Positions 12,220 through 63,469 of a stretch of DNA of 64,000 bases are shown one piece after another. The stretch's first letter is position 1. Each line of letters opens with the position of its first letter. The notes under the pieces were generated by a model, which saw only the letters and a list, made by a program, of their open reading frames with translations, was not told the DNA's origin and did no database searches. The DNA comes from Macrostomum lignano (taxonomy: Eukaryota). Location: the NCBI GenBank assembly GCA_002269645.1, contig NIVC01003539.1, positions 1 through 64,000 of the forward strand. Direction: 5' to 3'. The position numbers and the translations under genes are program-made.

Positions 12220-16055
<3,836 letters not shown>

Positions 16056-16760
16056 TCTAGAAAAATTCAGTGGAAGTAGAATTCAAGATTAGCTACATTT
16101 ATAAGTACACTATGTGGTTTGGGTGAGCTGCAGCGTTCATTAGGTAAGTGGCCTGTTTTCTTATTCCACTGAGTGATAAGTGGCTATTTTTGGATGAAGC
16201 TGCAGAGGCTGCAACAGCTGGGGCTGAGCTACATTGAGGTGAGATGCGTTTTTAAAGGTAAGATTCCTGTTTGCGGGTACAGTCTGCAGCTGGGTCAGGC
16301 TCCCAGTGTACTCACAGCTCAGCCTTGCCACCAAATGCATTGAGTCCTCTCCGTACACCGTGAGCTGAATGACCAAACATAGAGAAACTGCTTGCACATT
16401 CATTTCAGCCTTCATCACTTTTGGTTGGATGCTGGACAATGAGAGAGCCGAGGTGGAGGTGGCGGGGGCAAAGAGACGGGCAGAGCCGGTGGAGCAGAGA
16501 GCATACAGAGGCGCATAGCAACTTCCCAGCGCTGCAGCTCAGCCTTGGCTGCTTTTTAATTCCACTCTGAACTTGCATCCGCACGGAAGCCACTGGTGGG
16601 TTAATTTTGCAGATCGCCAACCAGACAGGACGGCTCTACAGAGATAAGGAGGATTGTCAAGACAAGAGTTCAGAATTTAATGGATTCGAATAAGCCAGCG
16701 GTTGCAAACTGAGCAGCCAAGCAACCGGGTGTTAACTGGACTCTGAGCTTTGGAGAGCGG

Positions 16761-39342: not shown

Positions 39343-41403
39343 TCAAATATAGGTGCACTTCTCGGCCGGAATGTGACCCGAGTTGCCAACGTATCGAACT
39401 GCCACCCGGCCATTTGGCCGAATAGTTATCCAGGTGATGGAGCCGTGGTCTAGGCTGAACCGGAGCCAAGCCTCCGGCGGCAGCTGCAACGCCCGGCAGA
39501 CGAAATAGCGAATAACGTTGGCGTGACAGACCAGCAATTCGTAGCTGTCCTCGGCTTGGCTGGCCGACGCCCGATGGAAGAAGCGGCGAAATGCGGACTC
39601 GATACGGGCTCCGTCCTGCGGGGGAGACCCCAGATAAGCAAAGCTAGCGAATTCTTTCGATTTTTTATTTGGCGATATTCGCGTGTTTCTCTACTGACAG
39701 TAGAAAATAAGGCATTTGAAATTGATAAAATTCTACAAAACTAGCTTGAATTTATGAGCAAATTATCAAATAGAGAGGCCGATGATCAATGAGAGGGGCG
39801 GATGATCTAAGTGAGGGGCGGATGCTCAAGGAGAGGGGCGGATGATCTAAGTGAGGGGCGGATGATCTAAGTGAGGGGCGGATGCTCAAGGAGAAGGGCG
39901 GTGATCAAGAAGAGGGGCGGATGATCAGAGAGGCGGATGATCAATGAGAGGAGGGGTAGATGATCAATGCGAGGAGGGGCGGATGATCAAGGAGAGGGGC
40001 GGATGATTAATGAGAGAACGGATGATCAGTGGGCGGATGATCAATGAGTGAACGGATGATCAGAGGGGCGGATGATCAATGAGAGGAGGGGTGGATGATC
40101 AAGGAGAGGGGCGGTTGATCAATGAGAGGGGCGGATGATCTAAGTGAGGGGCGGATGCTCAAGGAGAGGGGCGGATGATCTAAGTGAGGGCGGATGATCA
40201 ATGAGAGGCGTGGTGGATGATCAATGAGAGGAGGGGCGGATGATCAAGGAGAGGGGCGGATGATCAATGAGAGGAGGGGCGGATGATCAAGGATAGGGGC
40301 GGATGATCAGAGGGGCGGATGATCAATGAGAGGAGTGGTGGATGATCAAGGATAGGGGCGGATGATAAATGAGAGGGGCGGATGATCCAGGAACCAAGTG
40401 GCATATGAAAACAGTAGGAAAAAATAAATAAAATACACAGCAGCAGCGAGCAGACCTGATGAAATGTGTCCGGGCTGGGCTGATAGTGCGGCGCCGGTGG
40501 CTCAGGCGGCACAGGTGCGCCCTCCTCAAGCAAGGAGCAGGGCTCAGCGCTCAGGCTGCTCGGCAGATGACGGCGAATTGCTTCAGCTGTTTGCCTGCAG
40601 ACACGGATTGAATGAAAGCGGCGAATACACAAATAAGGTTAAACAAAAAGGGCGACAGATGACCAAGGGGCGGATGACCTAAGGGGGGAGAGGAAGACAC
40701 AAGACAGGATGCGGATAAGCAACAGGTGAGATGAGTGACTTAAGGCGGCAGCTAAAGGCGGATACTGAAGGGGCAGATGACCCAGGGCAGACAACTGAAG
40801 GGGCGGATGGCCCAGGGCGGATAAAGGGCGGATAACTGAAGGGACAGGTGACCCAGGGGTGGATAGTATCCATGGAGGCCAACAAAAGGCCCTAAAAGTG
40901 GTTAAACAAAGCATGCAGGCCCCTCACTTGGCCCTAGTCATGGTGGAGAAGTGCAGCTTAATCAGCGGCAAGTTCAGCTCTTTGAGCCGCTGGCCAGTGA
41001 GCTCAGCCTGTTGCCAGCCGAGCTCAGTGAGACACCTGGCCGCGTCGGTGTCGCCGTCGCAGTACTGGGCGTGCCGCACCAGGATGAGGTGCCTGGACGA
41101 TTTCGGCACAGCCTCCTCGAGAGCTTTCTCATAGGCTGCCCTTTCTTCATCATTACGCGGCGGCCGGACCAGACTCTTGGGATCTCGCCTATCCCAATTG
41201 TTATCCCAGCGTACGGACGGTTCGAAATTATTGGTGAAGGAGGCCAAAGCCTGGCTAGAGTGCAGGAACCGGGCGGCCAGGCCGGTGCCGCCGTAGGTTC
41301 CGCCAGCTCCGCTGCCGTCCTCAAAGCGCTGATAGTAACGATAGGCGCCTATTGCGGCCGCTGTGCCGAACAGGGCGGCGCATTTGCGTAGCACGCCGGA
41401 CAT
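39343..41403 (-). CDS. PGAM5: Mitochondrial Ser/Thr protein phosphatase PGAM5, about 295 aa, intact
   Basis: Exons 41403-40928, 40594-40456, 39615-39343. N-terminal hydrophobic anchor, WDNNWDRR (WDxNWD) motif, LVRHAQY histidine-phosphatase motif, [40 protein letters not shown]. Confidence 0.95.
39780..40385. repeat. Degenerate ~20-bp repeat (ggatgatcaatgagaggggc)n, PGAM5 intron 2
   Basis: Directly visible. Confidence 0.88.
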
Positions 41404-41464
41404 TCTGGCATGACAGATAGGGGGGGGGGGCAATTTTAATGGCTGACTGGCTGGAGATGAAATG

Positions 41465-43690: not shown

Positions 43691-43819
43691 GCTTAGACAG
43701 GGCAGTCGCCTCTCACTGCAATGCAATAATTAGGGTTTGTGACGGCAGTAAAGTTTAACCCAAATCCATTGTTTTGCAAAATATACTCCTAATCTACCTT
43801 AATCCTATCCCCTCCAATA

Positions 43820-46404: not shown

Positions 46405-49400
46405 TCACAGCGATCCCCGAATCAGGTTGCCATCATCGAAGCTGAACTGCACCGCCTTCTTGCCGCCTTCAGCCACGGCAGCGACAGCCGCCGACGTGGC
46501 CGCGGTGGCCAGACGAACGCCGCCGACTCGGCGACGCCGCCTAACCGAGGAACCGGCACGGCGGGGCACGTCGACGCCCAACTGATCGTCGCCCGATTCG
46601 TCATCGGCGGCGCCGGCATCCATGTCGTCGTCAACGCCGCCGAATAGCTCGGGATCGCTAAAGTGCTGCGGCTCATCCTGCAACGCACCGTCGCCACCGA
46701 CACCGCTGCCGATGATGCCGTTGTCGACAGCGTCGTTCTGCTGGCTGCCAGCCGGTATTTTATCGCCATTTTCACCGACATTATCGTCGTAATCTTCGTC
46801 GGAGTTGCTCGTCGAACTGCTGGAATCGTCGTCAAGGCAACCGTCCGACCACACTACCGGGCTTCTCCGTCCGAGTCGTTTAGCGCCAGCCGGGCACCTC
46901 GGCCGCCGCTGCCGCCTCCGCCGCCGCCAGCGGGGTTGTCAATGCGGCAGAGCATCTCGGCCAGGTCGGTGAAGCGCAGAGAAGGCGGCGCCTGCTCCTC
47001 CGGCGCGGTGGCGGCCACGGCTGCGGCGGCGGCCGCTGCGGCGGTGGCAGCAGCATTGGGATTGGTTGAGGATGCCAGGGATCGGACTGTTGGCGGCTGA
47101 TCTGCAATGGCCGAAGTCGGGATGTTCGGTAATTCGGGAGGATGTTCGGGAGGTTGCAGGTAACACAGGTAGAATAGGAAAGAATTTACTCGCCAAAAAG
47201 TCATCAAAAAGTCGCCTAAGATTAAATTTCAAGGGTTTTTATTGTGTGCGACTCTGAAACAACTCCGGGGACCGTAGACTCGTGTCTGGAGTCGCTAAAG
47301 AATCGCTGAGTTGCGTCTAAAGCGCATCTGCGTCACTTTAATGAATCAGAATCGCATTTCAGATTTTTAACAACTCAATGGTAGAAAGTTGAGCGCTAAT
47401 ACGACTTTTGGACGACTTTTTAGGCACTCTTACGATTCTGCAACTCACACGATGCCCTAGTGACTCAACAGTCGCCTCTCAGTCGCATTGCAGTCGCCCA
47501 TCCTCGCATATATTTGCCCACACCAATCATTAGCAATCTGAAGTTACCAACAAGCCGCACAAAAGGTTGAAAAGAACACATTACCAGTCAGAGTAGCCAC
47601 AAACTTGGGGCCTGTTGCAATGCTTGCTTGCTCCCAAGGTACAGCTTGTGTTAAGCACAATATCATGAAAACTCACCTGTCGTTTAAACACCGGCAGCTT
47701 TTTAGATCGGCTCCACTTGGTAATGGCGTCCAATGCGTAGCGATAGCCGACCTGGTAGATTTCTTCAAACGAGCCGAATTGCAGAGTGGCGTATCGTTCA
47801 ATTGGCGGCCGCAGGTATTCGCACAGGCCGTCAGATTTCACGCGCTCCAATTGGCGAACGCAGGACACGTACGCCAGACGGGACTGGATCTCGGTCAGGT
47901 TCGGCACGTTCACCTGATTGGGCGAAGTGATGCATTACACAACCTGATTGCGAAACTTAGCTAAGACAATGGAACAACTGCTGTCCTAAATAAGCTAATT
48001 GAGCTCCAGTGTGACATAGATAAGCTAATTGAGCTCCAGTACAGGTAAGCTAATAGAGCTCCAGTACAGGTAAGCTAACTGAGCTCCAGTGTGACATAGA
48101 TAAGCTAATTGAGCTCCAGTACAGGTAAGCTAATAGAGCTCCAGTACAGGTAAGCTAACTGAGCTCCAGTGTGACATAGATAAGCTAATTGAGCTCCAGT
48201 ACAGGTAAGCTAACTGAGCTCCAGTGTGACATAGATAAGCTAATTGAGCTCCAGTACAGGTAAGCTAATTGAGCTTCAGTGTAACACAGGTAAGCTAATT
48301 GAGCTCCAGTGTCACACAGGCAAGCTAATTGAGCTCCAGTATCATACAGGTAAGCTAATTGAGCTCCAGTGTCACACAGGTAAGCTAATTGAGCTCCAGT
48401 GTCACACAGGCAAGCTAATTGAGCTCCAGTGTCACACAGGCAAGCTAATTGAGCTCCAGTATCATACAGGTAAGCTAATTGAGCTCCAGTGTCACACAGG
48501 TAAGCTAATTGAGCTTCAGTGTCACACAGGCAAGCTAATTGAGCTCCAGTATCATACAGGTAAGCTAATTGAGCTCCAGTGTCACACAGGTAAGCTAATT
48601 GAGCTCCAGTGTCACACAGTCAAGCTAATTGAGCTCCAGTGTCATATAGATAAGCTAATTAAGCTCCAGTGTCATATAGATAAGCTAATTAAGCTCCAGT
48701 GTCATATAGATAAGCTAATTGAGCTCCAGTGTCACACAGATAAGCCAATCAAGCGGGTGTCACGGGTGAGCTAATTAAACAACAGTCGCATATAGCCATG
48801 CATCAAACTAAATAGACGGAGAAGGTCGCACCTTGGCGGCAAACGGATTAATCCGCTTGTACAGCAGCCACCAGCCGGACAGCTCGTCTCCATAATTAGT
48901 CAAATTAGTCTCATCCTGCGACCCGACATCCACAGCGAAGATAGTAGACGGGGCAAACTTAGTTTTCATCACATCGGCCGGCAGGTTGTTGACGTAGCCG
49001 CCGTCTAGGAGCAAGTTGCCGCTGGCCGGGTCGCACAGGGGCGGCAGGTAGCCGCTCAGAGACATGCTGGCTCGAACGTAGCGCCACAACGAGCCGCTGG
49101 TGTGAACTCGCATCTGCGATTTAGTAATATCAGTAGTGATGCAGAAATATGGCAGCCACAGGTCCTCGATGCAACGATCGCCAAACACAGATTCGATGCC
49201 GCGGTTGAATGCCCGGCCAGTGAACATTGCAGTCTGAGGATAGGTGAGATCCACCAGCTTGTTCCACAGCGAGCTCATCTCTTTAGAGAACTGCCGAGCC
49301 CTGGCTTCGAAGCCTTCTAGACGGGTCTCCTCAGCCCACAGGGCGCCCATGAACGAGCCGATGCTGGTGCCGCCAACCATGTCGATGGGATGCCGTGCTC

Positions 49401-51228
49401 AGTGAGTGCGCGCACAATGCCAACGTGAGCGATGCCTCTGGCGCCGCCGCCGCCCAGTACCAGGCCTACCGCTGTGTTGGTGACCACTCGGGCCAGACGG
49501 GAAATGTCCGACATCGGGTCTGGCGGCTCGGCGAATACGCGTCTGCGGAGGCGAGATTGCTGCTCATTGTTGGGGCTGATCAGAATCATGAGCAAATGGC
49601 ATTTTGGGGGCAGAGGCTGGGGTAGTTGATGTACATTTGTGGGCAGAGACTGGGGTAGGTGTTAATACATTTGGGGGCAGAGGATGGGGTAGGGGTTAAT
49701 GCACATTTGGGGGCAGAGGCTGGGGTAGGGGTTAATGTACATTTGGGGGCAGAGGCTGGGGTAGGGGTTAATGTACATTTGGGGGCAGAGGCTGGAGTAG
49801 GGGTTAATGTACATTTGGGGCAGAGGCAGGGGTAGTTAATGTACATTTGGGGCAGAGGCTGGGGTAGGGGTCAATGTACATTTGGGGGCAGAGGCTGGGG
49901 TAGGGGTCAATGTACATTTGGGGGCAGAGGCTGGGGTAGTTAATGTACATTTGGGGCAGAGGCTAGGTAGGAGTAAGTGTACACCCGGGGTAGGAGTTCA
50001 AGGAAAGGAAAGGCGGTAGAGTCGCATCTTAGTCGCCCCCCCCCCCAGAAGGCAAACTCAGAGCAAACCGAGAACAGCAATGTAGACAAGGCGATCACCT
50101 GTAAACCTCGAGCAGCCGGCTGGAGCTGGCACAGGCTCCGGCGCCGCGCCTACGGCTAAACATTCGACGCGGGGCGCGCACGTGCAGGTGCTGTTGAATC
50201 ACCAGACGATTGTCACCGAGGGGCTCGGAGGCGCGACTTAAAAACTCGCCAGTTTTTCCTGCAGTGGGCGCGTCGTTATGTCAATGTCTCAATGATCCGT
50301 TCATTAAAATGCACTACTGACTGTCTGTCTGCCTGTCTATCTATTTAGGTCAAAAAGTCCACTGTGACTGCAGGAATGTGGTGTATGCCATTATGTGCAA
50401 GACTTGCAATGACCGCTGTATCTACGTAGGTGAGAGAGGAGGCGCTCTTAAAGTCAGACTTTAAGCTCACCTGAGCGACATCAGACTGGCTAAGGACACC
50501 CCAATCTCCAGACACTTTCGGTCACCAAACCACAGTATTCACGACCTCCGCTTTATGGGTCTGTGGTACCTCAGTACTGAGTGCCTGGCCACTAAAGAGG
50601 GCGCTCAACGCAGGCGAGGAATATGGAGCAGAAGCTCATCGCTTTACTACAGACTCAGACTCCGGCAGGTTTAAACACCGTCATCATTGAAAAAGACGCC
50701 TGCATCCCAATAGTGATCTGTTTCACGGACCACTCTGGGCGAGTTGTTCATCAAATTCGCACGGCCATTTCGAACCACGCTGCAGAGCTGGATACAGTGG
50801 CTGCCTATACTCGCTCTCGCTCATTAAAGGACATTCTATGTCCATCCAATCTGCCCGCCGGAACTAATGGTCAGTCTCGAAACTCAAACCTCTTTTCTGA
50901 TGAGCACTAGATGTACAGGTGTACACACGCATTGCAACGTAACGCTCCAACCATATTGATCATTTTATTTTACACGTGGTTTTTTATATACTCACTATAA
51001 ATACTCAACTCTGTTTTAATTTACCCACTTTCACTGATTTTTATTTACAATATACCCTGACGAAGACCCGGTTCGGGTCGAAAATTTGTTTTTTTTCTTG
51101 GAATTTAATTGGAGAAATTGTGACTTTGCTTCAACTGTATGCGTGGTTTCCTTTCGCCTTATCTATTTATCTATCTATCTATCTATCTATCTATCCATCT
51201 ATCTATCTATCTACAGTGTATCTATCCA

Positions 51229-51267
<39 letters not shown>

Positions 51268-54200
51268 GTCTGCCCGCCAGTCTCACCAGGCGTGGGATAG
51301 AGCGTGCTCTCCTTATGCAGCAGAATGAGCATGTTGAGCACTCGGCAAGAATCGGGCAGCACTACCTGCCGCACGTGATCCATAGTTTCAACTCTATCGC
51401 TGGCCAGGGCCACAATTAGCACACAATCGGCCTGCCGAATGCACCGCTTAGTCCAGGCGGTCTTGTCCAGGTCGCAGAGGTACAGCAGCAACCGGTGATC
51501 GTCCTCCTGCTGAGCCAGCCAGCTGGTGACCCGGTACTCCTGGTCGCGATCGAATGCTCTGCGACCGAATCGTTTGAGCATGATGCGGGAGTTGAGGCGC
51601 AGACTGGCCCCGATGGTTGACATGGCGTGCTGCAGCTCCAGGGAGAATGCTTCTAGGGGCACCTGGGGAGAATTGCAGATGAGAAATTTGAATGATTGAA
51701 TCGGTATCGAAATAACCTCACTCATTCAGCAGCCTCTCAAATAGCTTGGCTTCCATAGCTACCTCACTCATTCAGCAGCCTCTCAACCAGCTTGGCTTCC
51801 ATAGCTACCTCACTCACTCAGCAGCCTCTCAATCAGCTTGGATTCCATAGCTATCTCACTCACTCAGCAGCCTCTCAATCAGCTTGGCTTCCATAGCTAC
51901 CTCACTCATTCAGCAGCCTCTCAACTACTAGCTTGGATTCCATAGCTACCTCACTCATTCAGCAGCCTCTCAACTACTAGCTTGGATTCCATAGCTACCT
52001 CACTCATTCAGCAGCCTCTCAACCAGCTTGGCTTCCATAGCTACCTCACTCATTCAGCAGCCTCTCAACCAGCTTGGATTCCATAGCTACCTCACTCATT
52101 CAGCAGCCTCTCAACTACTAGCTTGGATTCCATAGCTACCTCACTCATTCAGCAGCCTCTCAACCAGCTTGGCTTCCATAGCTACCTCACTCATTCAGCA
52201 GCCTCTCAAATAGCTTTGATTTTATAGCTACCTCACTCATTCAGCAGCCTCTCAAATAGCTTGAGCTATTTACCTTAGTGCTAGCTGGGAACAGGGCCAC
52301 AGAACGCAGGTTGGACATTGGCAAACGGTACAGCTCGAACTCTCGCCCAGTCCTAGACTCAGGATTGTCAACAATATTGCCAAGAAGCCATTGCGACACC
52401 AGAGTGGTGAGTCGGGTCACTATATACGGATGACGCCGCTTGATGTTGTCCAGCAGGTCAACCGGGATGGCGGCCAGTTCGCTGTCCCGTACGGCCAGCA
52501 CGGTGGTGGCTCTGGGCCTGGCGGTGAACACTTCTAAGAAACCAACCAGATCGCCCCTGCCCAGCTCGGCTGTGAGCTCCTTGTGACCCTGAGGAGTTGT
52601 GTGTGCCTGGCGAAGGCGGCCGTGCAACAGCAAGTAGACAGCGTTGGCGATGTCGCCCTGCAAGGCGGAGAATAGCCAGATAGCAGTTGTGTACTTTTAA
52701 ATAGACTGGACTTCAGCTTAGATAATAGTTATTAGCTGAATACTAACCGCAATCAACTCTGCTTAACTTGGAGGTGCTAACTCGTGTCTAGAGTCGGCTG
52801 TAGAATCACTGAGTTGCGTCTAACTAAAGCACATCTGCGTCGCTTAATGAAGAAGAATCGCATTTCACATTTATAGCAACTCTATTTAGTCTACTTGAGT
52901 AAGTAGAAAGTTAAGCGCTAGCACAACGACTCTTAAACGACTTTTTCTACGGTCTTAAAGCTCACGTGATGCCCTAGTGACTCAACAATCGCCTCTCAGT
53001 CGCATTGCAGTCGTTTGAGTCAGTCAAAAAAGTCACAAGAGCCGGCCCAGAGTTGCCTGAGTCACTACTGAGCTGTTTTCAACGGGATATGCTTTTACAC
53101 TACTGTCAGTAGTTTTAGCCAGGGAAAATATTTCTGGTAGGGCTAGATCGCAAATTTTGGGCTTCCTTATAATTATCGAGCAGTTGAAGCTCTGGGTAAA
53201 GAAAAGTTGCCAGTCTTGGAACTTTGTAAGCCGAACTAAGGCAGTTAGAAGAAGTAAGGTAAGACTGGTGAAAAGGCTAGGGAATGCGTAAAACTGTTAA
53301 GGGTAGTCTATGCCTAATTTATATTGCACAACTAAGAGTTAACTATTGTAAGAACTATTGCATGCTTAAATCCTACATTTTTTCCGTTTTACATCTTTGG
53401 GTGTCCTGACTCAATTCTTTGATCTCTAAGTATCTAGGATTAGAGAAATCACGAGCCTGGTAGAAGCAATCTACCAAAACTCAAACCAGTTATAATCCAT
53501 TAAGCATAACAATAACAAGCAGTAGCCTAAGCCGCAAACCACACTTTTCCATAAATATTTCCAAGAGCCTAACCTGCTTATAGAGCGGCTTGCCAGACTC
53601 CAGGCAGAGCCAGTCCAGCACAAAGTCCACCTGTCTGAGAAACGGCGACAGTCGTCTAACAATTAAACTGGCCAGCGGCAGCACCAGACTGGGCTGGGCC
53701 CGCATCAGGGCGTAGAAATTCCGGCTGCTGATGGCGGCCACGCAGGCGTCGGCTTCGCAGCGGACGGTGAAGAGCGACGCCTCGCCAGTGAGAATAGCGA
53801 TCATGCCGCAGAGCTCGCCAGGACCGGCCGAGTAGAGCAGTCTGGAGCCCTGGTAGCCCTGGAGCGCGGGATGAAAAATCATATGGAAGGCTAGCAGGGG
53901 TCAGTGGCAACGTGATTCAAGGGGTCAACAGGGTTCAATGATAGATGGAGTAACGGAGTTCAATGGGAAACGCTGATCAATTGGTTATGGGTAATGGTAA
54001 TGGGCTCAATGGAACAAAAGGAGCTAAGGGGTTAACGGGGGTCGAAGACAAAAAAGGTCAAAGGGATAACGGGGGTTAAGGGGACAAAGGAGCCAAGGAT
54101 TTAACGGGGGTCCAAGACAAAGAAGGTCAAGGGGGGTAACGGGGGTCAAGGGGGACAAAAAGGGTCAAAGGGGTAAGAGGTCAAGAGGACAAGAGGTCAA

Positions 54201-55772
54201 GGGGGTAGGGGTCAAAGACGTCCCGTTCATGGGCTCATGGGTAACGTCAGTCAAGCAATGCTCAAGAAAGGATGACTCTGATAGGGAGAGCGAATGCTGA
54301 GGTCACTCATAATCACAAATGTAATTGAGACCCGTGTCCAGACAGTTCGCAGAGGAACAGCCCACCTGCTGCGTCACAGCCAGCCTGCCAGTGACAACAT
54401 AGAACAGCGTAGGCAAATGCTCGCCCTGCTTGGCCAGCTTGGCACCGGCGTGCACATTCGCCAGGCTGACCCGACCGTCCAGCAGGCTGGCATCGGACAG
54501 GCCAAACAGCTCGGCTAGGTCAGCCTGGGCAGCGGACAGCAGCTGCTCCTGACGGGCCGCCTCCGAGTCTTCTGGGCCTGCGAAAATAAAAAAACAGTTG
54601 GGTAATTGACTGTCTATGGACACACCCGGTTCCGACACTGCCCACAAACTCGACATTCCAAAACTAGCTTTCGACACACGACACTCCGACATTATCCGAC
54701 ACACTCAACATTTCGACATTCCGACAAAATCTATCGGCACATTCGACATGATCAATCGACACACAAAACAATCCGACACTCGACATTCCGACACTATCCA
54801 TCGACACTCGAGATTCCGACATTATCCATCGACACTCGACATACCGACGCTATACATCGACACTCGACATACCGACACTATCCATGGACACACTCGACAT
54901 TCCTACACTATCCATGGACACACTGATTCTGATTCTGATCCCCGCGCAACAAATGTAGATGAGGGAAATCCTTACCATCCTGATCCTGTCGCGGTCTTCG
55001 CTGCTTCCGAAGTCGTTGAAAAGTGACAGGCGTGCCATCACGTCCGGCTCGCTGCTGCTGCTGCTGCTGATGCCGCAGGCGGTGCTGGTGATGCCCGACT
55101 CCGCCGCCACCGCTGCCAACAATGCGCGGCGCCTCGCCCATAGCCAGCAGTGACCGGTCGCCCGAGCTTGCTCCGGCGCCGCCCTTTCCGTTGCCGTCCA
55201 ATTCGCTGTCGGAGTCCTCGCTATCCTCGCTAGTGAAGATGACACCCGGTCGGCCTTCGGTTCTATCCAAGTTTGTCGACGAAGCGCTGGCGGTCCGTCG
55301 GTGATGCTTCGACGTCCAGCGTCGGTCGTTGCGCCGCCTCCGCATGGCGGTCTCCTCGGCGGCGTCGAAGTCGGTGGGATCGCCTCGATCTGCCAGGCCC
55401 GAGTCGGAGCCGGCGGAATCCGCTGAGGCGGCGGTGGCAGACGGCGACTTCGACCGGGAGCGGCGGAACACCCGGATGGGAATGGCTGCCGACGGTGTGG
55501 GCGTCAGGACCGGTGGCGGCTTTGATGCCATCGGCACCGGCTGGGGCGCTGGAGTGCTGGAGCCGGGGGGGACGCCGGTTGCCGCTGCAGCCGAGGAGGC
55601 CAGGCTCAGCACCCGACAGCCGGATGGCGCATGGGAGTCTGAGCTGACCAGCTCGCTAGTGAGTCCTAGGTAGCCGTTAAGCGCCTGTTTTGTGCAAGTT
55701 ATACAGGCTGTAATAAGATACGGATGGCAGACAGACAGACCGACACAAAGACAGAGACACACAGACACAGAC

Positions 55773-55835
<63 letters not shown>

Positions 55836-55860
55836 CACAGACAGACAGACAGACAGACAG

Positions 55861-55894
<34 letters not shown>

Positions 55895-55904
55895 AGAGAG
55901 ACAC

Positions 55905-55951
<47 letters not shown>

Positions 55952-56000
55952 CACAGACAGACACACAGACAGACACACAGACAGACAGACAGACAGACAC

Positions 56001-56066
<66 letters not shown>

Positions 56067-56076
56067 AGAGAGACAC

Positions 56077-56155
<79 letters not shown>

Positions 56156-56200
56156 CACAGACAGACACACAGACACACAGACAGACACACAGACAGACAC

Positions 56201-56259
<59 letters not shown>

Positions 56260-57177
56260 CACGCAGGGCAAACTCACCTGAAAGGTGACCCGCTGCAGCC
56301 GGATGACAATAAGCTGCACCAGCCGCACCATGGTGAGCCGGTGCTGCGGCTTGGCCAGCAACTCGGCCAGCCGGCCGGCGGGAATTCGCAGCACGCGGCA
56401 CTCGGACGAAGCCACAACGGCGCGCAAAGATTTGAGCTTAGGCGAAGAACCAGTGAGAACTTCTAAGAAGCTGAGCAGAGAACAGATTGAGTGATGCTCG
56501 CCAAACTCGTGAAACTGCTGCTGTTGCTGCTGCTCCAGCAGGAGGAGTCGAACCCGGCCCCGCTGCACAATGTACAGATCCCCGTCGGCGTCGCCCAAAT
56601 CAAAGAGAGTCTCGCCGTGGCGCAGCTGCACAATCTCCAGGCATTTGCACATCTCCAATAGAAACGATTTCTCCAATCCGTCGAATATCCTGAGCGACCG
56701 CACGGCCAGGTAAAACTCGTTCAGCATTGGCGGCGGCCAGGCGGAGTCGTCGTCGGCATCCGTTGGCTCCAGGAAATAGTCCGGTATGCCGTCCATCAGC
56801 GATTGCCGCTGCCTCAGCTGCTGCTGCTGCTGCTGCTGCTGGTACCGCTGGCCGGGCCTGAGCAGCTGCATCAACTCAGCGCCCTGCGGCAGGCGCGGCA
56901 TTGTGGGCAAGTTTGGCGCCGCCTGCCGCATCACGCGGCGCAGCCAGTAGCTCAGACGGTCGCGCTTGCGAAACGCCGACCTGGACGGCTGCTGCGTCAG
57001 CGACGGATTGCGAAGCCTCGACCGGCCAGCCAGCTGCGGCCGGCCAGAAGCCGGTGCCCCTCGCTGCGCCAGCGGCCGACCGGTCGACCAGTAGCGCCGA
57101 TAAAAGTACAGCAGCAGCAGGGCGCCGGACAGGGTCAGCAGAGCGGTGAGCACCAGGGCGTCCTGGCCCTGCCCCAG
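46405..57177 (-). CDS. PNPLA6: Neuropathy target esterase / swiss cheese (PNPLA6/7): N-terminal TM, three cNMP-binding domains and a patatin domain
   Basis: Exons 57177-56278, 55684-54976, 54577-54366, 53858-53574, 52657-52274, 51662-51287, 50258-50099, 49542-48832, 47913-47677, 47096-46405. Motifs [27 protein letters not shown] (GxSxG), [18 protein letters not shown]. Needs +1 nt near 49388 and near 46860. No in-frame ATG at the 5' end. Confidence 0.92.
47190..47500 (+). mobile_element. Dispersed interspersed repeat, copy B (NTE intron 9)
   Basis: Shares ctcgtgtct, ctgagttgcgtcta, gaatcgcatttca, gtagaaagtt and gatgccctagtgactcaaca...cgcctctcagtcgcattgcagtcg with copy C. Confidence 0.65.
47990..48750. 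repeat. 30-bp minisatellite (gtaagctaattgagctccagtgtcacacag)n, NTE intron 8
   Basis: Directly visible. Confidence 0.93.
49600..49975. repeat. ~36-bp G-rich repeat (ggggcagaggctggggtaggggttaatgtacatttg)n, NTE intron 7
   Basis: Directly visible. Confidence 0.9.
50347..51160 (+). mobile_element. Penelope-like retroelement (PLE) remnant: decayed GIY-YIG endonuclease, RT-thumb/linker-like peptide and hammerhead-bearing 3' region, in NTE intron 6 (antisense to host)
   Basis: Frame from 50345 reads [25 protein letters not shown]...[32 protein letters not shown]; after a frameshift, [18 protein letters not shown]. This follows the PLE GIY-YIG pattern NVVY-x-I-x-C-x2-C...YVGE...R...H...HF...H...E...GLN. 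One TAA stop (50462) and one frameshift. Confidence 0.85.
51050..51090 (+). ncRNA. Minimal hammerhead ribozyme core (PLE-associated, type I-like)
   Basis: CTGACGA (51057-51063), A, then a perfect 6-bp stem II GACCCG-gtt-CGGGTC (51065-51079), then GAAA (51080-51083). Stems I/III and the NUH site could not be established by eye. Confidence 0.65.
51712..52265. repeat. 46-bp minisatellite (cctcactcattcagcagcctctcaaccagcttggcttccatagcta)n, NTE intron 5
   Basis: About 12 units filling the intron. Confidence 0.93.
52780..53090 (+). mobile_element. Dispersed interspersed repeat, copy C (NTE intron 4)
   Basis: Near-collinear with copy B; ends in GTTTTCAACGGG, resembling the reverse complement of the copy A start (ccagttaaaaac). 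Confidence 0.65.
55727..56262. repeat. (CAGA)n microsatellite, NTE intron 1
   Basis: Directly visible. Confidence 0.95.
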
Positions 57178-57299
57178 CTGGGGAATCAGCCGGATTGGGA
57201 ACGGCTGCAGTTGTTGGGGCGGGGCTGCGGAGTCTGCGTGGATTCAGTTTGCCTAGCAACTAAATCTAATCTTAATTAGACAACCTTATCTTAACTTGA

Positions 57300-58400
57300 T
57301 AGAGTAAGTGGAACACAAATCTCACCCCCATAGAGTAAGCGGAGCTGAAATCTAAGCCTCATAGAGTAAGCGCAACTGAAATCTAAACATCATAGAGTAA
57401 GCGGAACTGAAATCTCACCCCATAAGAGTAAGCGGAACTGAAATCTCACCCCTATAGAGTAAGCGGAACTGAAATCTCACCCCTATAGAGTAAGCGGAAC
57501 TGAAATCTCACCCCATAAGAGTAAGCGGAACTGAAATCTCACCCCTATAGAGCAAGTGGAACTGAAATCTCACCCCCATAGAGTAAGCGGAACTGAAATC
57601 TCACCCCTATAGAGTAAGCGGAACTGAAATCTAAACCTCATAGAGTAAGCGGAACTGAAATCTAAACCTCATAGAGTAAGCGGAACTGAAATCTAAACAT
57701 CATAGAGTAAGCGGAACTGAAATCTCACCTCATAAGAGTAAGCGGAACTGAAATCTCACCCCTATAGAGTAAGCGGAACTGAAATCTCACCCCCATAGAG
57801 TAAGCGGAACTGAAATCTAAACCTCATAGAGTAAGCGGAACTGAAATCTCACTCCCATAGAGTAAGCGGAACTGAAATCTCAACTCGATAGAGGAAGCGG
57901 GACTGAAATCTCAACCCGATAGAGTCAGCGAAAATGAAATCTTACCTCATAGAGTAAGCGGAACTGAAATCTCAACTCGATAGAGTAAGCGGAACTGAAA
58001 TCTCAACTCGATAGAGAAGCGGGACTGAAATCTCAACTCGATAGAGTAAGCGGGACTGAAATCTCAACTCGATAGAGTAAGCGGGACTGAAATCTCAACT
58101 CGATAGAGTAAGCGGGACTGAAACCTCAACCCCATAGAGTAAGCGGAACTGAAATCTCAACTCGATAGAGTAAGCGGAACTGAAATCTCAACTCGATAGA
58201 GTAAGCGGGACTGAAATCTCAACTCGATAGAGTAAGCGGGACTGAAATCTCAACTCGATAGAGTAAGCGGGACTGAAATCTCAACTCGATAGAGTAAGCG
58301 GGACTGAAACCTCAACTCGATAGAGTAAGCGGGACTGAAATCTCAACTCGATAGAGTAAGCGGGACTGAAACCTCAACCCCATAGAGTAAGCGGAACTCA
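57300..58400. repeat. ~31-bp minisatellite (catagagtaagcggaactgaaatctcacccc)n upstream of NTE
   Basis: Directly visible. Confidence 0.95.
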
Positions 58401-58784
58401 ACAATTTAGTACACAGGAACTACAGCAGTTAATAAAGATTTATTTAGTTAAAAAAAACAAAATTTTGAAACACAGCTAAAAATTTTCTGACAATTTCAAT
58501 AGGTAGTGGAAAAGCTTTGAAAAAAGTTGAGTAAAATATATATAAGAAGCTAAATGAACCACATTATGGAATGTATAACACACACACACACACGCACACA
58601 CACACACACACACACACATACACACATACACACGATATTACGAGTACAATACAATAGGAAGCACATACGCGATATAAGAATTAGGTTAGTTGATTGAGAT
58701 TATAACATTTTACTCGCCATTTAAGCTTATGGTTGTCTACTCGCATCTCAATTGATCCAGTAAGCAATGACAACTGCTTACGGG

Positions 58785-59005
58785 GAAAAGTCTATTTGAG
58801 GCGTTTTATTGTCTGCGACTCTGCAATGCCTCTGGGACGCTTCTTTAATGCCTCTGGGGCGCTTCTATAATGACTCTGGGGCGCTTCTATAATGCCTCTG
58901 GGGCGCTTCTATAATGACTCTGGGGCGCTTCTATAATGCCTCTGGGGCCGTAGAGTCCTAGCTTCCTAGCTGAAGCCTGCCAGAGTCGCTGTAGAATCAC
59001 TGAGA
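58785..59005 (+). mobile_element. Dispersed interspersed repeat, copy D (partial, with an internal 22-bp tandem expansion)
   Basis: gaggcgttttattgtctgcgactctg and gagtcgctgtagaatcactgagatgcgtcta match copies A-C; internal (ctctggggcgcttctataatg)n. Confidence 0.55.
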
Positions 59006-59529
59006 TGCGTCTAAAGGGAACTTTTTGAAGCACTTTATGAAGATGATCGATGAAAAAGCAGTTTAGTTGTGGATGCCCATGTTCGGTACCATGCTGCAGG
59101 ATCTACAAGTAACCACTGGACTAGCGAAAGCAGTTGCCATTGAGTGCTGTGTTTTGCCGCAGTGCATCAAGTGAGATGAACCTGCATAAGCTTAAACGGG
59201 ACGCAAAAGGCTAAATTATTATTTTGTGAAAGACAGGCCCAGCAAAGCAAAGGAAAATTCACTGGGAATCCAAGTCTCTGAAGAGAACGCCATTTTTGAT
59301 TGGCGAAAACAACGTGAACTGCGTGAGAAAACTGTAAATAAAAATGACAAGATGCTATGGTAAGAACTGACATAGGCAGAGCTGGAAACCGAAGTCAGGA
59401 CACTACGCATTAATACAATGGAGATGGAAAATTTGAATGATTGAGATTTTTTGGATAGAAAGTGCAAAAGGTTAAGAATAGACAATGTTGGGAAGCTAAA
59501 AATTGGGATTCATGAATAGGGAAGACGGT

Positions 59530-59955
59530 AGGATCTGTGGGTGGGGAACAGCAGAATGGGATCTGTGAGTGGGGAATAGAATGGGATCTGTGAGTGGGGA
59601 ACAGAATGGGATCTGTGAGTGGGGAACAGAATGGGATCTGTGAGTGGGGAACAGAATGGGATTTGAGTGGGGAACAGAATGGGATCAGTGACTGGGGAAC
59701 AGAGTGGGATCTGTGAGTGGGGAATAGAATGAGATCTGTGAGTGGGGAACAGAATGGGATCTGTGAGTGGGGAACAGAATGGGATCTGTGAGTGGGGAAC
59801 AGAATGGGATCTGTGAGTAGGGAACAGAATGGGATCTGAGTGGGGAACAGAATGGGATCAGTGAGTGGGGAACACAATGGGATCTGTGAGTGGGGAACAC
59901 AATGGGATCTGAGTGATCTGAGAATGGGATCTGAGTGGGGAACAGAATGGGATCT
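59530..59955. repeat. 25-bp minisatellite (agaatgggatctgtgagtggggaac)n
   Basis: Directly visible, downstream of the USP stop. Confidence 0.92.
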
Positions 59956-60040
59956 TAATGTAAGAATAATGGGGTGTGTATAGAATTAGCTAGCGGAGGA
60001 CATTGTCACCAACAAAAGCAGCTCATGCAGTCACACCCAG

Positions 60041-63000
60041 TTACTCCCCAGCAACCAAGGCGGCGGCAGGCCTCCGACCGTAGACCAGCACGCACGGTAC
60101 AGCGAAGGCGGCCTCGTCAAAGACCCGACTATCAGCCGACAGGCAGTCGACTCTGCCGTCTTCCAAACGGTGCCATCGACAGGCGCCGGCGTCGCCATGG
60201 CGACTGCGAACGTAAACAACGTATTGCTGCTGAAAGCATCGATAGCGCCAGGCAACGGCCAGCAGATCGTAGCAGTCAGAAGCAGAAGCAGCAGAACCTT
60301 CTTCTCCGCTGATTAACGGCGAAAATCCTCGAATTGGGAAGTCCAAAACGGCTGCCCGATGGTGGCGGCAGTCTGCAAGGCGAATCAGCAGGACTGGCGG
60401 CAGCGGAGGCCGCAGCCGCTGGCGTCGGATGGCCCGCTGGCCGAAAGCGCCGCAGGACGGGCACAGCCAGGCCTGGCGCCGGTCCAAGCCGCTGCCCGGC
60501 CGCCACAGCTCGGACAGGCAGTCGGACAGGCGGACGCGGTTGCGGCTACGGACGGGGCCGGACTGGCACCGACTGGCATCCCAGTTGAAGTCTTGGGCGG
60601 ACTGCAGTTGGCGGTTGGAATAGGGGCTGCGCTATTTATTGAGTTGGGAGCTTAAACAGCCCAAATGATAATCCATGAACTATCAATAGTGGAGCTTGGA
60701 CTGGAGTCCCAGATTCCTAACTCACAGACATGGACTATCAATAGTGGAGCTTGGACTGGAGTCCCAGATTCCTAACTCACAGACATGGACTATCAATAGT
60801 GGAGCTTGGACTGGAGTCCCAGATTCCTAACTCACAGACATGGACTATCAATAGTGGAGCTTGGACTGGAGTCCCAGATTCCTAACTCACAGACATGGAC
60901 TATCAATAGTGGAGCTTGGACTGGAGTCCCAGATTCCTAACTCACAGACATGGACTATCAATAGTGGAGCTTGGACTGGAGTCCCAGATTCCTAACTCAT
61001 GGACTATCAATAGTAGAGCTTGGACTGGAATCCCAGATTACCAATCCATGGACTATCAATAGTAGAGCTTGGATTGGAGCCCCCGATATCTCCGATATCT
61101 TAAATAAGTTAAATCAAGGTAAGGATCCAAAAATGACCCCCATGACAGATGAGTCGACACAAACTCACCCAGGACCGAACCTGAAACCATTCAGGCCTGG
61201 GCGGCGGCGGCGGCGGCGGCACCAGCAGGTCGTCGGCATCTTCGGTGGCAGCCCTCGGCACCGCGGCGAAATACTCTATAGCAGCCGGGCCGCCGCTCGA
61301 TTCCCAGGTGTCGTTGAGATTTGAAAACGTGACAGCCCGACAGTCTGTCTGATAGAAATCGAACTGGCAGTGCTCAAACAGATTAGCTAGCTCAGTTTTC
61401 AAGCTATTTAACCTGTCATTTAGGCTGGACAAGCTCACAGCCAATGGAAAGCTGGCAGGCTTCCTACAGCACTGTACGCTGCTGATGCCATGTACACAAT
61501 AGCGAGAATGTGGTCGCGAGTTCGAATGCAAAACTGGACTGGTTGGACCAGCTCGTAACAGTACATAGAATCCTCCTGGTGCGGTAGGCCTAAAAAGTAC
61601 AGGGATAGAGTTTAAACGTGATTTGATCAATTATGATCCCCGCAACAAAATCGGGGATTCTGATCCCAGCAGCACTATTTGGGATTTTGATCCCAGCAAA
61701 ATTATTAGGAATTTTGATTCCAGCGAAATTATTAAGGGATTTTGATCCCAGAAAAACTGGGGATTTTGATCCCAAACACTATTTACTGGGGATTTTAATT
61801 CCAACAAAACTACTGGGGATTTGAGCCCAACAAAACTACTGGGGATTTTGATCCCAACAAAACTACTGGGGATTTTGATCCCAACAAAACTACTGGGGCT
61901 GGGGATTTTGATTCCAACAAAACTACTGGGGCTGGGGATTTTGATTCCAACAAAACTACTGGGATTTTGATCCCAACAAAACTATTGGGGATTTTGATCC
62001 CGACAAAACTACTGGGGATTTTGATCCCAACAAAACTATTGGGGATTTTGATCCCGACAAAACTACTGGGGATTTTGATCCCAACAAAACTACTGGGGAT
62101 TTTGATCCCAACAAAACTACTGAGGGATTTTGATCCCAACAAAACTACTGAGGGATTTTGATCCCAACAAAACTACTGAGGGATTTTGATCCCAACAAAA
62201 CTACTGGGGATTTTGATCCCAACAAAACTACTGGGGATTTTGATCCCAACAAAACTACTGGGGATTTTGATCCCAACAAAACTACTGAGGGATTTTGATC
62301 CCAACAAAACTACTGGGGATTTTGATCCCAACAAAACTACTGGGGATTTTGATCCCAACAAAACTACTGGGGATTTTGATCCCAACAAAACTACTGGGGA
62401 TTTTGATCCCAACAAAACTACTGGGGATTTTGATCCCAACAAAACTACTGAGGGATTTTGATCCCGACAAAACTACTGGGGATTTTGATCCCAACGAAAC
62501 TACTGGGGATTTTGATCCCAACAAAACTACTGAGGGATTTTGATCCCAACAAAACTACTGAGGGATTTTGATCCCAACAAAACTACTGAGGGATTTTGAT
62601 CCCAACAAAACTACTGGGGATTTTGATCCCAACAAAACTACTGGGGATTTTGATCCCAACAAAACTACTGGGGATTTTGATCCCAGCAACAATTTGAAAA
62701 CAAAATAAAGTCTGCATTACCAGCATCTCACCATAGTCTGTGTACCAATCGTCCGCAGAGAACACCCTAGCCACTTTGCCGTCAGTCAGTTGAGCCAACA
62801 GCAGACAGTCGGAACGAATCTGGATAAGTGTACAAAAATCTCAGTTTTCTATTGGCAGTCAGTATATCAACTAATCTCATAACGCAACAGCTACTGACCT
62901 CAAATTTTGCCCCAATCAGGGCGCACAGATCGCCTGCTTGGCCAGCAGTCGGAGCGTCGATTCGACAGCGCGTCGGCTGATAGCGTCGCCCGGTTGCCAA

Positions 63001-63288
63001 TGGCAACGCCGGCACCAGACAGAAATGAAACGGATGCAGATTGGCAGATGGCAACAGTGAGTCGGTCGGAGAGTTCAGGCTGAGCTGCACAAACGGCTGG
63101 CAAGCATCGGACTGGTGGCCGCACTCACAGCATTCGGTGACGCACTGCAGCTGACCTGTGAACAGATCCGACACCAGTGTGACCGCCGCCGCTTCAGCGT
63201 CTGCCTCTCTGGGCGGCTGTTTCTTGGAAGCCGAGTGTCCGGCGGCCAGCTCCACATGGAGGCCATTCAGCAGGCAAGCCAGGTAATC
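60041..63288 (-). CDS. Ubiquitin-specific protease-fold protein, 3' part; probably catalytically inactive
   Basis: Exons 63288-62899, 62819-62732, 61589-61169, 60601-60041. DYLACLLNGLHVEL (QDAxEFL...LHEEL box), VSDLFTGQLQCVTECCECGH, QPFVQLSL, LSDCL...WLCPSC, LPPVLLIRL, DFP, YDLLAV, WHRLEDGRV, CVLVY. Frameshift near 61463. The Cys-box exon lies beyond the window. Confidence 0.8.
60675..61080. repeat. 55-bp tandem repeat, last USP intron
   Basis: (catggactatcaatagtggagcttggactggagtcccagattcctaactcacaga)n. Confidence 0.93.
61635..62690. repeat. 27-bp minisatellite (ggggattttgatcccaacaaaactact)n, USP intron
   Basis: About 38 units, each with an internal GGGAT/ATCCC dyad. Confidence 0.95.
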
Positions 63289-63469
63289 CTTTTTGGTAGT
63301 AATTACAGTTTGAAACTTTATAAGCTCGAAAGTCTTGTCTGCAACTCTCACTAGAGCAGAGGTTCACATTGTTTTAAATATTTAAACTGTCCGTTATATA
63401 CAGATCAAGGTAGATCTTGTGAAGGGTAGATCCGTGAAGGTTAGATCTTGTAAAGTTTCTATATTGTAA

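What the first reader, a model, noticed from the sequence alone, without database searches (positions are those of the whole stretch)
57150..57260. NTE has no start codon: the ORF opens at an in-frame (phase-0) acceptor, a candidate for spliced-leader-donated AUG
Seen: upstream of the TM helix the frame has no ATG before a TGA near 57245. Two CAG acceptors (ttccccAG, exon start 57177; ctgcAG, exon start 57204) are both phase 0, and no convincing upstream coding exon was found. Knowledge: flatworm spliced-leader exons end in AUG, which can act as the initiator Met. Inference: SL trans-splicing would give [29 protein letters not shown], a plausible NTE N-terminal anchor.
Basis: partly seen in the sequence, partly recalled or inferred. 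Interest (0 to 1): 0.7.

Follow-up and report, generated by a model that had tools for sequence, protein, structure and literature searches.

The report
Flatworm NTE gene lacking its own AUG
A Macrostomum lignano (flatworm) neuropathy-target-esterase gene has no start codon of its own ahead of its membrane anchor and most likely borrows the AUG that ends this species' spliced leader, a mechanism already known in flatworms but not shown here by any transcript.

Summary
On the minus strand the NTE/PNPLA6 reading frame opens after a TGA (57246-57244). It runs through a TM helix and the conserved FRKRD motif with no in-frame ATG. No ATG occurs in any frame for 400 nt (57331 to 56931). CTGCAG| (exon base 57204) and CCCCAG| (57177) are both phase 0.

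The organism is Macrostomum lignano. Its single 35-nt spliced leader ends in ATG, and about 30-39% of its genes are trans-spliced. CTGCAG| fits the published trans-splice motif [T/C]TNCAG exactly.

The gene lies in a same-strand run (UCH, NTE, PRELI, phosphatase). Three of its genes have a satellite array, then a motif acceptor, then the ORF start. The only public model of the gene is a chimeric UCH-NTE fusion joined at 57177, a typical mis-annotation of flatworm operon genes.

An SL-donated initiator Met is therefore the best explanation (about 0.6). No SL-joined read or cDNA could be reached. The statistics are modest (P about 0.03 and 0.08). A cis mini-exon remains possible: the satellite carries ATG GGG|GTGAGA in phase.

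The mechanism is known from Schistosoma mansoni (Cheng et al. 2006). If confirmed, this is a new member of a known kind, with modest interest.

The parts
57244..57246 (-). In-frame TGA that closes the NTE reading frame upstream
   Evidence: Translation; codon list
57205..57210 (-). CTGCAG| candidate trans-splice acceptor. Exon first base 57204, phase 0. Exact match to the M. lignano SL-acceptor motif [T/C]TNCAG. Would give [24 protein letters not shown]...
   Evidence: motif from PMC8629364. Near-twin of the gene's own intron-6 acceptor cactgcag|
57178..57183 (-). CCCCAG| candidate acceptor. Exon first base 57177, phase 0. Would give [15 protein letters not shown]... Used as the fusion point in the public chimeric model
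   Evidence: Near-twin of the intron-5 acceptor ttctccccag|. Misses the published motif at one position
57100..57159 (-). N-terminal transmembrane helix [20 protein letters not shown], followed by RR
   Evidence: Kyte-Doolittle 19-residue mean 2.25. Aligns with the TM helices of NTE homologs
56278..57204 (-). NTE exon 1: TM anchor, FRKRD motif and first cyclic-nucleotide-binding domain. Donor TTTCAG|gtgagt at 56278/56277
   Evidence: Pfam PF00027 hit, E=2.4e-9; junctions
56932..57330 (-). ATG-free stretch in all three frames of the mRNA strand
   Evidence: P about 0.025 by Markov-1 simulation
56929..56931 (-). First ATG downstream of the acceptors. In frame (MRQAAP...) but after the TM helix and inside the conserved FRKRD...RRVM motif
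   Evidence: alignment
57299..58398 (.). 31-bp satellite, about 35 copies, directly upstream of the exon. Four units carry ATG GG[G/A]|GTGAGA on the gene strand (ATG at 57331, 57579, 57796, 57858). This is the rival cis mini-exon
   Evidence: TRF; ATG and donor scan
60041..63351 (-). Upstream same-strand UCH/USP-family gene (partial in window). Stop codon TAA at 60043-60041, 2.8 kb from the NTE acceptor, of which about 1.7 kb is tandem repeat
   Evidence: Pfam UCH PF00443, 26.2 bits against a 23.9 cutoff. Repeats
47677..57204 (-). Modelled part of the NTE/PNPLA6 gene. Nine exons, eight GT..AG introns of 398-1028 nt, 1080+264 codons without a stop, one 1-nt frame break at 49386/49387. The acidic C-terminal tail continues to about 46.4 kb
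   Evidence: Patatin PF01734, E=2.2e-28
43716..43721 (-). TTGCAG| motif acceptor 25 nt upstream of the ATG (43690) of the next same-strand gene (PRELI family). A satellite array lies just upstream
41451..41456 (-). CTCCAG| motif acceptor 47 nt upstream of the ATG (41403) of the following same-strand gene (histidine-phosphatase/PGAM-like, marginal Pfam hit). A satellite array lies just upstream

Best explanation
The NTE (PNPLA6/Swiss-cheese) gene of Macrostomum lignano is SL trans-spliced at an acceptor immediately upstream of its membrane-anchor codons. The most likely acceptor is CTGCAG| (exon base 57204); CCCCAG| (57177) is an alternative or second site. The 35-nt spliced leader ends in AUG. 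Joined in phase 0, that AUG becomes the first AUG of the mRNA and the initiator Met. The product is [38 protein letters not shown]... (or M-LGQGQD...): a short lumenal tail, a TM helix, then the cytoplasmic cNMP-binding and patatin domains. The pre-mRNA upstream of the acceptor, including the 31-bp satellite, is an outron. It may be the intercistronic part of a polycistronic transcript shared with the upstream UCH gene. Shown: the sequence features, the organism, the nature of its SL, and the locus architecture. Inferred: that trans-splicing happens at this gene, at which AG, and that the SL AUG is used for initiation.
For: 1. No own start. The frame is closed by TGA at 57246-44. There is no in-frame ATG before the TM helix and the conserved FRKRD motif, and no ATG in any frame for 400 nt.
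2. The headless N-terminus is real coding sequence. HMMER aligns homologs from query residues 6-15 onward. The TM helix scores KD 2.25. The TM+RR and FRKRD elements align with homologs whose native Met lies 1 to about 70 residues before the helix.
3. Organism. The closest relative, P0136, is UniRef100_A0A1I8FDS5 of Macrostomum lignano. It matches the window even in out-of-frame stretches at 95-97%.
4. M. lignano biology. It has one SL, CGGTCTCTTACTGCGAAGACTCAATTTATTGCATG. About 30-39% of genes are trans-spliced, and 70% of trans-spliced genes are conserved with human. The trans-splice acceptor motif is [T/C]TNCAG (PMC8629364; PMC5730564). [quoted passage not shown]
5. Acceptors. CTGCAG| at 57204 is an exact motif match in phase 0. 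Both candidate sites are near-twins of proven cis acceptors in the same gene.
6. Context. UCH, NTE, PRELI, phosphatase and SH3 genes all lie on one strand. NTE, PRELI and the phosphatase gene each show a satellite array, then a motif acceptor, then the ORF start. This matches the published repeat-inflated operons. The repeat-adjusted distance from the UCH stop to the NTE acceptor is about 1.1 kb before subtracting the UCH 3'UTR.
7. Public model. The only public model fuses UCH to NTE exactly at 57177 through a weak donor G|GTCGGA. Fused chimeras with an SL acceptor at the joint are a known mis-annotation of flatworm operon genes (PMC12582326).
8. Precedent. In S. mansoni the SL AUG is in frame with 28% of trans-spliced transcripts, and more than 40 cDNAs need it (Cheng et al. 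2006, as cited in PMC9851317).
Against: No SL-containing read, cDNA or annotation for this locus could be retrieved, so trans-splicing of this gene is not shown. The statistics are weak: P about 0.08 for a phase-0 motif acceptor and about 0.025 for the ATG-free stretch. The phase-0 AGs are simply CAG codons if the stretch is coding. A cis alternative exists in sequence: ATG GGG|GTGAGA in the satellite at 57331, phase-compatible with both acceptors. Homolog N-terminal extensions vary from 1 to about 70 residues, so a short upstream coding exon is not excluded. The other gene copy (P0136) shows an apparent 2-nt difference between the 57177-equivalent acceptor and the TM helix. If real, it would put the SL AUG out of frame there, but that model has at least ten such frame hops. 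The repeat-adjusted distance to the UCH stop (about 1.1 kb) is at, not clearly under, the published 1-kb operon threshold.
Confidence: 0.6

Rival explanations
1. Ordinary cis-splicing. A short 5' exon carrying the ATG lies upstream and is spliced to the 57204 or 57177 acceptor. It could be in the 57.3-60.0 kb interval, possibly within the satellite, or beyond. The window's first recognisable exon would then be exon 2.
For: The 31-bp satellite carries ATG GGG|GTGAGA, with a donor identical to the gene's own intron-6 donor and in phase 0. Copies have their ATG at 57331, 57579, 57796 and 57858. ATG CGA|gtagac and ...CGA|gtaaaa occur at 58746-58714. Homolog N-terminal extensions are variable. More than half of M. 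lignano genes are not trans-spliced. Flatworm SL acceptors are often shared with cis-splicing (PMC12582326).
Against: The promoter and first exon would have to sit inside or between satellite arrays. The nearest candidate implies a 121-148 nt intron, against 398-1028 nt for all eight introns of this gene. Unique-sequence ATGs upstream mostly have poor or no in-phase donors. The public gene predictor found no such exon and fused the gene to its neighbour instead.
Confidence: 0.22
2. No AUG is supplied at all. Translation starts at a near-cognate codon in the open stretch (for example CUG 57156 in a GCC-CUG-G context, CUG 57177 or GUG 57153). Alternatively it starts at the first real AUG (56931), giving a soluble NTE without a membrane anchor.
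For: Several in-frame CUG/GUG codons lie just before the helix. The 400-nt ATG-free leader would let scanning ribosomes reach Met 56931, which is in frame with a purine at -3.
Against: Initiation at 56931 would discard the TM helix and most of the conserved FRKRD motif, which align with homologs. Near-cognate initiation is normally inefficient and is not needed in an organism whose SL supplies an AUG.
Confidence: 0.08
3. The headless 5' end is an artefact. Either this copy is a decaying duplicate in a hidden-polyploid genome, or the assembly has an error near the start.
For: There is a 1-nt frame break in the patatin exon at 49386/49387 and a possible second one near 46.86 kb. M. lignano carries many duplicated genes (PMC10468722).
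Against: Apart from that single break, 1,344 codons over nine exons are open, with canonical splice sites and intact GXSXG and DGG motifs. No ATG exists in any frame within about 150 nt upstream of the helix, so a local indel would not restore a start.
Confidence: 0.05

Closest known systems
[quoted passage not shown]
   Same: A flatworm whose SL ends in AUG. The acceptor is in phase with an ORF that has no AUG of its own upstream of conserved N-terminal residues.
   Different: That system was shown with cDNAs and translation assays in Schistosoma mansoni. Here it is inferred from genomic sequence in the free-living Macrostomum lignano, and the acceptor actually used is unknown.
M. lignano SL trans-splicing and repeat-inflated operons (Wudarski et al. 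2017, PMC5730564; Ustyantsev & Berezikov 2021, PMC8629364)
   Same: Same species and SL. The acceptor motif [T/C]TNCAG is present. The gene is conserved. It lies in a same-strand gene run with tandem repeats filling the intergenic spaces.
   Different: Those studies did not address use of the SL AUG for initiation. Whether this particular gene is in their trans-spliced set could not be checked here.
Chimeric gene models of operonic flatworm genes with an SL acceptor at the fusion point (Calvelo et al. 2025, PMC12582326)
   Same: UniProt A0A1I8FDS5 joins a UCH-family gene to NTE at the 57177 acceptor.
   Different: That work covered parasitic flatworms and used SL-read evidence. Here the chimera is recognised from domain content and from the out-of-frame junction in the window sequence.
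Neuropathy target esterase / PNPLA6 / Drosophila Swiss cheese
   Same: N-terminal TM anchor followed by basic residues, the FRKRD motif, cyclic-nucleotide-binding domains, and a patatin domain with GTSIG and DGG.
   Different: The N-terminal third is very divergent (about 30% identity to non-flatworm homologs), with polyQ runs and a long low-complexity linker. There is no genomically encoded initiator Met before the anchor.

Membership tests
SL-AUG-dependent ORF (flatworm slORF, sensu Cheng et al. 2006) | The organism has an SL whose last three bases are AUG | tested here: met
   The organism was identified as Macrostomum lignano. Its SL is ...TTGCATG (PMC8629364; PMC10468722).
SL-AUG-dependent ORF (flatworm slORF, sensu Cheng et al. 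2006) | The mRNA of this gene is SL trans-spliced at a defined acceptor | not testable with these tools
   No M. lignano transcripts, reads or annotation were reachable. Only motif and context support exist.
SL-AUG-dependent ORF (flatworm slORF, sensu Cheng et al. 2006) | The SL AUG falls in frame with the main ORF at that acceptor | tested here: met
   Exon first bases 57204 and 57177 (also 57168 and 57162) are phase 0. This is conditional on one of them being the site used.
SL-AUG-dependent ORF (flatworm slORF, sensu Cheng et al. 2006) | No genomically encoded in-frame AUG upstream of conserved N-terminal residues | tested here: met
   TGA lies at 57246-44 and the first ATG in any frame is at 56931, after the TM helix and inside the FRKRD motif. 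An AUG on a separate upstream exon is not excluded.
SL-AUG-dependent ORF (flatworm slORF, sensu Cheng et al. 2006) | Translation actually initiates at the SL AUG | not testable with these tools
   Needs Ribo-seq, N-terminal proteomics or reporter assays.
NTE / PNPLA6 family | Patatin domain with a GXSXG serine and a DG[A/G] aspartate | tested here: met
   PF01734, E=2.2e-28. GTSIG and LLDGGY are present. One 1-nt frame break lies at 49386/7.
NTE / PNPLA6 family | N-terminal TM anchor plus cyclic-nucleotide-binding domains | tested here: met
   KD19 of 2.25 for [19 protein letters not shown]. PF00027 hit in exon 1. Homologs align from the TM helix onward.
Downstream gene of an M. lignano operon | Same-strand upstream gene within 1 kb repeat-adjusted distance | tested here: inconclusive
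   The UCH stop at 60041 is 2836 nt from the acceptor at 57204. About 1710 nt of this is tandem repeat, leaving about 1.1 kb before subtracting the unknown 3'UTR.
Downstream gene of an M. lignano operon | A polycistronic precursor transcript spans both genes | not testable with these tools
   No RNA data were available.

The most novel reading that the evidence does not exclude
Trans-splicing acts as a topology switch. Only SL-capped mRNA carries an AUG ahead of the anchor and makes ER-membrane NTE. Any transcript that escapes trans-splicing, or is spliced at an out-of-phase AG, presents a 270-400 nt AUG-free leader, so ribosomes start at the in-frame Met 56931 and make a soluble, anchor-less NTE. 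On this reading the ATG-free stretch is maintained for that purpose, and the amount of membrane-bound versus soluble enzyme is set by SL usage.
Probability: 0.08. Interest if true: 0.6.

Novelty: new member of a known kind. Interest (0 to 1): 0.3.

Why it matters
If confirmed, this would be a clear example outside the parasitic flatworms of a conserved, disease-relevant enzyme (the PNPLA6/NTE orthologue) whose N-terminal membrane anchor can only be translated because the spliced leader supplies the start codon.

The practical consequence is for annotation. Such genes are systematically mis-modelled, either truncated at an internal Met or fused to the upstream gene. UniProt A0A1I8FDS5 is an example of the latter: it is a UCH-NTE chimera. 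Gene finders for Macrostomum and other flatworms need to allow 'SL AUG + phase-0 acceptor' as a start.

The mechanism itself has been known since 2006, so this does not change our understanding of trans-splicing.

Tried and rejected
1. Word-indexed homology searches with exon 1, the patatin exon and the polyQ-free N-terminus returned no Macrostomum sequence. Even P0136 was missing, so that database evidently lacks the species.
The unspliced exon-1 ORF is not on record.
3. Exact look-ups of three spliced NTE variants (starting at 57204, at 57177 and at Met 56931) failed. So did the PRELI positive control, so the absence is uninformative.
4. The supplements of Wudarski 2017 have no PNPLA6 entry. 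The PNPLA6 entries in the Grudniewska 2016 supplements are a weakly similar germline paralogue (e=2e-32), not this gene.
5. I suspected that 'EDSIYC' at the N-terminus of P0136 was a translated SL. I rejected this: the window DNA there encodes EDSMYC with unrelated codons, and no SL-like sequence occurs in the window at up to 3 mismatches.
6. Rfam found nothing in the window, so there is no SL RNA gene here.
7. A real UCH-NTE fusion protein is rejected. In the window sequence the 60079-to-57177 junction reads NTE exon 1 in frame +2 and terminates near 56879.
8. Phase-0 enrichment of AGs was considered as evidence and set aside, because these AGs are CAG codons if the stretch is coding.

Full report
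**What is there.** The finding lies on the minus strand, at the 5' end of a multi-exon gene spanning about 46.4-57.2 kb. Translating window:56250-57300:- gives [55 protein letters not shown]...[22 protein letters not shown]... The frame is closed by TGA at 57246-57244.

The stretch [19 protein letters not shown] has a Kyte-Doolittle 19-residue mean of 2.25 and is followed by RR. Exon 1 hits Pfam cNMP_binding. A downstream exon hits Patatin at E=2.2e-28 and carries GTSIG and DGG. Full-length NTE/PNPLA6 homologs align from the helix onward. The gene is an NTE/PNPLA6/Swiss-cheese orthologue.

I modelled nine exons with eight canonical GT..AG introns of 398-1028 nt. They give 1080+264 codons without a stop. 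The only interruption is a 1-nt frame break in a C-run at 49386/49387. The gene is therefore not a decayed pseudogene.

**Checking the observation.** One search lists every AG between the TGA and the helix. The exon first bases are 57233 and 57224 (phase 1) and 57204, 57177, 57168 and 57162 (phase 0).

strengthens the 'no ATG' statement. On the mRNA strand there is no ATG in any frame between 57331 (inside the satellite) and 56931. The ATG at 56931 is in frame, but it lies after the TM helix and inside the conserved FRKRD...RRVM motif. The gene's own sequence therefore cannot initiate the conserved N-terminus at an AUG.

The chance levels are only moderate: P about 0.025 for the ATG-free stretch and about 0.08 for a phase-0 motif acceptor in the 94-nt open stretch. 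The phase-0 AGs are CAG codons if the stretch is coding, so I do not count their phase as independent evidence.

**Which organism.** The word-indexed protein database gave nothing closer than 30% identity for exon 1. For the patatin core it gave 65-78% identity to metazoan PNPLA6/7.

The exhaustive HMMER search found one much closer protein, P0136 (E=5e-120). It is UniRef100_A0A1I8FDS5, 'Cyclic nucleotide-binding domain-containing protein', from Macrostomum lignano. Mapped back by tblastn, it follows the window exon by exon. This includes stretches translated in the wrong frame, which still match at 95-97%. The window is therefore M. lignano or a very close relative, and P0136 is a gene model from an error-rich earlier assembly or a homeologous copy.

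**What is known for this species.**
- M. lignano has a single 35-nt SL, CGGTCTCTTACTGCGAAGACTCAATTTATTGCATG.
- 30% (PMC8629364) to 38.8% (PMC5730564) of its genes are trans-spliced.
- 70% of trans-spliced genes are conserved with human.
- The top motif at trans-splice acceptors is [T/C]TNCAG.
- About 15% of genes are in operons whose intergenic distances are inflated by repeats, with a peak near 100 bp once repeats are subtracted.
- All reported flatworm SLs end in ATG. [quoted passage not shown] 2006, as cited).

**How the locus fits.** CTGCAG| at 57210-57205 is an exact match to the motif. CCCCAG| at 57183-57178 misses it at one position. Both are near-twins of cis acceptors used within the same gene: cactgcag| in intron 6 and ttctccccag| in intron 5.

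Directly upstream lies a 1.1-kb array of a 31-bp satellite (57299-58398), followed by further arrays. At 60043-60041 sits the stop codon of a same-strand gene that passes the Pfam UCH threshold (26.2 bits against 23.9). The distance from the UCH stop to the acceptor is 2836 nt, of which about 1710 nt is tandem repeat. That leaves about 1.1 kb before any 3'UTR is subtracted. AATAAA occurs at 58810 and 58444.

Downstream on the same strand are a PRELI-family gene and a histidine-phosphatase-like gene. Each has the same layout: a satellite array, then a motif acceptor, then the start codon. TTGCAG| lies 25 nt before the PRELI ATG at 43690. CTCCAG| lies 47 nt before the phosphatase ATG at 41403. 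The background motif frequency is 0.0025 per base, so each case is individually weak. Three consecutive genes with one architecture do fit the published description of M. lignano trans-spliced clusters.

**The public model.** P0136 starts in the UCH gene. It leaves that gene through a poor donor (TACG|GTCGGA) 33 nt before the UCH stop codon and enters NTE exactly at CAG|CTGGGG (57177). In the window's cleaner sequence this junction reads exon 1 in frame +2 and terminates near 56879. The fusion is therefore an annotation artefact rather than a real fusion protein.

Calvelo et al. (PMC12582326) report that operonic flatworm genes are commonly fused into chimeric models with an SL acceptor at the joint. 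P0136 looks like such a case, produced because NTE offers no ATG of its own.

**Where the Met should be.** Homologs with a native Met place it 1, 1, 6 and 26 residues before the helix, and up to about 70 residues in a wider set. An SL Met would lie 17 residues (57204) or 8 residues (57177) before it, which is normal in both cases. The same variability means homology cannot exclude a short upstream coding exon.

**Rivals.**
- *Cis mini-exon.* This is the main rival. Four units of the satellite read ATG GG[G/A]|GTGAGA, with a consensus donor in phase 0. The nearest has its ATG at 57331. Spliced to 57204 or 57177 it would give MG-PFPIRL... or MG-LGQGQ... Against it: the implied intron is 121-148 nt, while this gene's introns are 398-1028 nt; transcription would have to start inside a satellite; and the predictor behind P0136 did not find it.
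- *Near-cognate or internal-Met initiation.* Starting at a near-cognate codon, or at Met 56931, is possible. Starting at 56931 would discard conserved residues.
- *Artefact or pseudogene.* This is unlikely. The gene is otherwise intact, and no frame within about 150 nt upstream of the helix holds an ATG.

**What could not be done.** No M. lignano transcript, read or current annotation was reachable. The defining feature, an SL joined to this exon, remains untested.

**Verdict.** The SL-donated-AUG interpretation is the best-supported explanation, at about 0.6, with 57204 slightly favoured over 57177, but it is not proven. The cis mini-exon stands at about 0.2. The mechanism has been known in flatworms since 2006. 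If confirmed, this is a new member of a known kind, and its main value is as an annotation lesson. Interest is about 0.3.

Noticed in passing
window 49386-49387 (minus strand): There is a 1-nt frame break inside the patatin exon (...ALTEHGIP | [10 protein letters not shown]...) at a run of C. The rest of the 1,344-codon model is open, so this is probably a homopolymer assembly error rather than decay.
   Followed up: partly
window about 46850-46900 (minus strand): The acidic C-terminal tail may contain a second frame change. Frame 1 ends ...[20 protein letters not shown]...LNDSDGEAR*. Frame 0 continues with [22 protein letters not shown]..., which resembles the acidic NTE C-terminus.
   Followed up: no
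window 55728-56259: Intron 1 of the NTE gene is almost entirely a (CAGA)n microsatellite of about 133 units. Most introns and intergenic spaces of this locus are filled with different tandem arrays (periods 4, 16, 22, 25, 27, 31 and 55 bp).
   Followed up: no
window 36.2-63.4 kb, minus strand: Five consecutive genes share one orientation: SH3-domain gene, histidine-phosphatase/PGAM-like, PRELI-family, NTE and UCH-family. Three of them (NTE, PRELI, phosphatase-like) have a satellite array followed by a [T/C]TNCAG acceptor just before the ORF start. This may be one or more repeat-inflated operons.
   Followed up: partly
UniProt A0A1I8FDS5 (P0136) versus window 50170-61587: The public M. lignano protein is a chimera of the UCH-family gene and NTE. 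It has at least ten frame hops relative to the window and lacks the patatin domain, so it should not be used as a reference NTE sequence.
   Followed up: yes
window 60041-60625 (minus strand): In the last exon of the upstream UCH-family gene, the position where USPs carry the catalytic His box (GHY) reads QQY. The Pfam match is only just above threshold. This may be a catalytically inactive USP-like protein, but the judgement was made by eye only.
   Followed up: no
window 12200-16100: A block of about 3.9 kb has 25-28% GC, a GC skew of -0.7 to -1.0 and no ATG on either strand. It is probably a long simple-sequence array.
   Followed up: no
window 41403-41450 (minus strand): Between the CTCCAG| acceptor and the main ATG of the phosphatase-like gene there is an out-of-frame upstream ATG (ctgtcATGccagaATG). 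It would remain in the mRNA if that acceptor is the trans-splice site.
   Followed up: no
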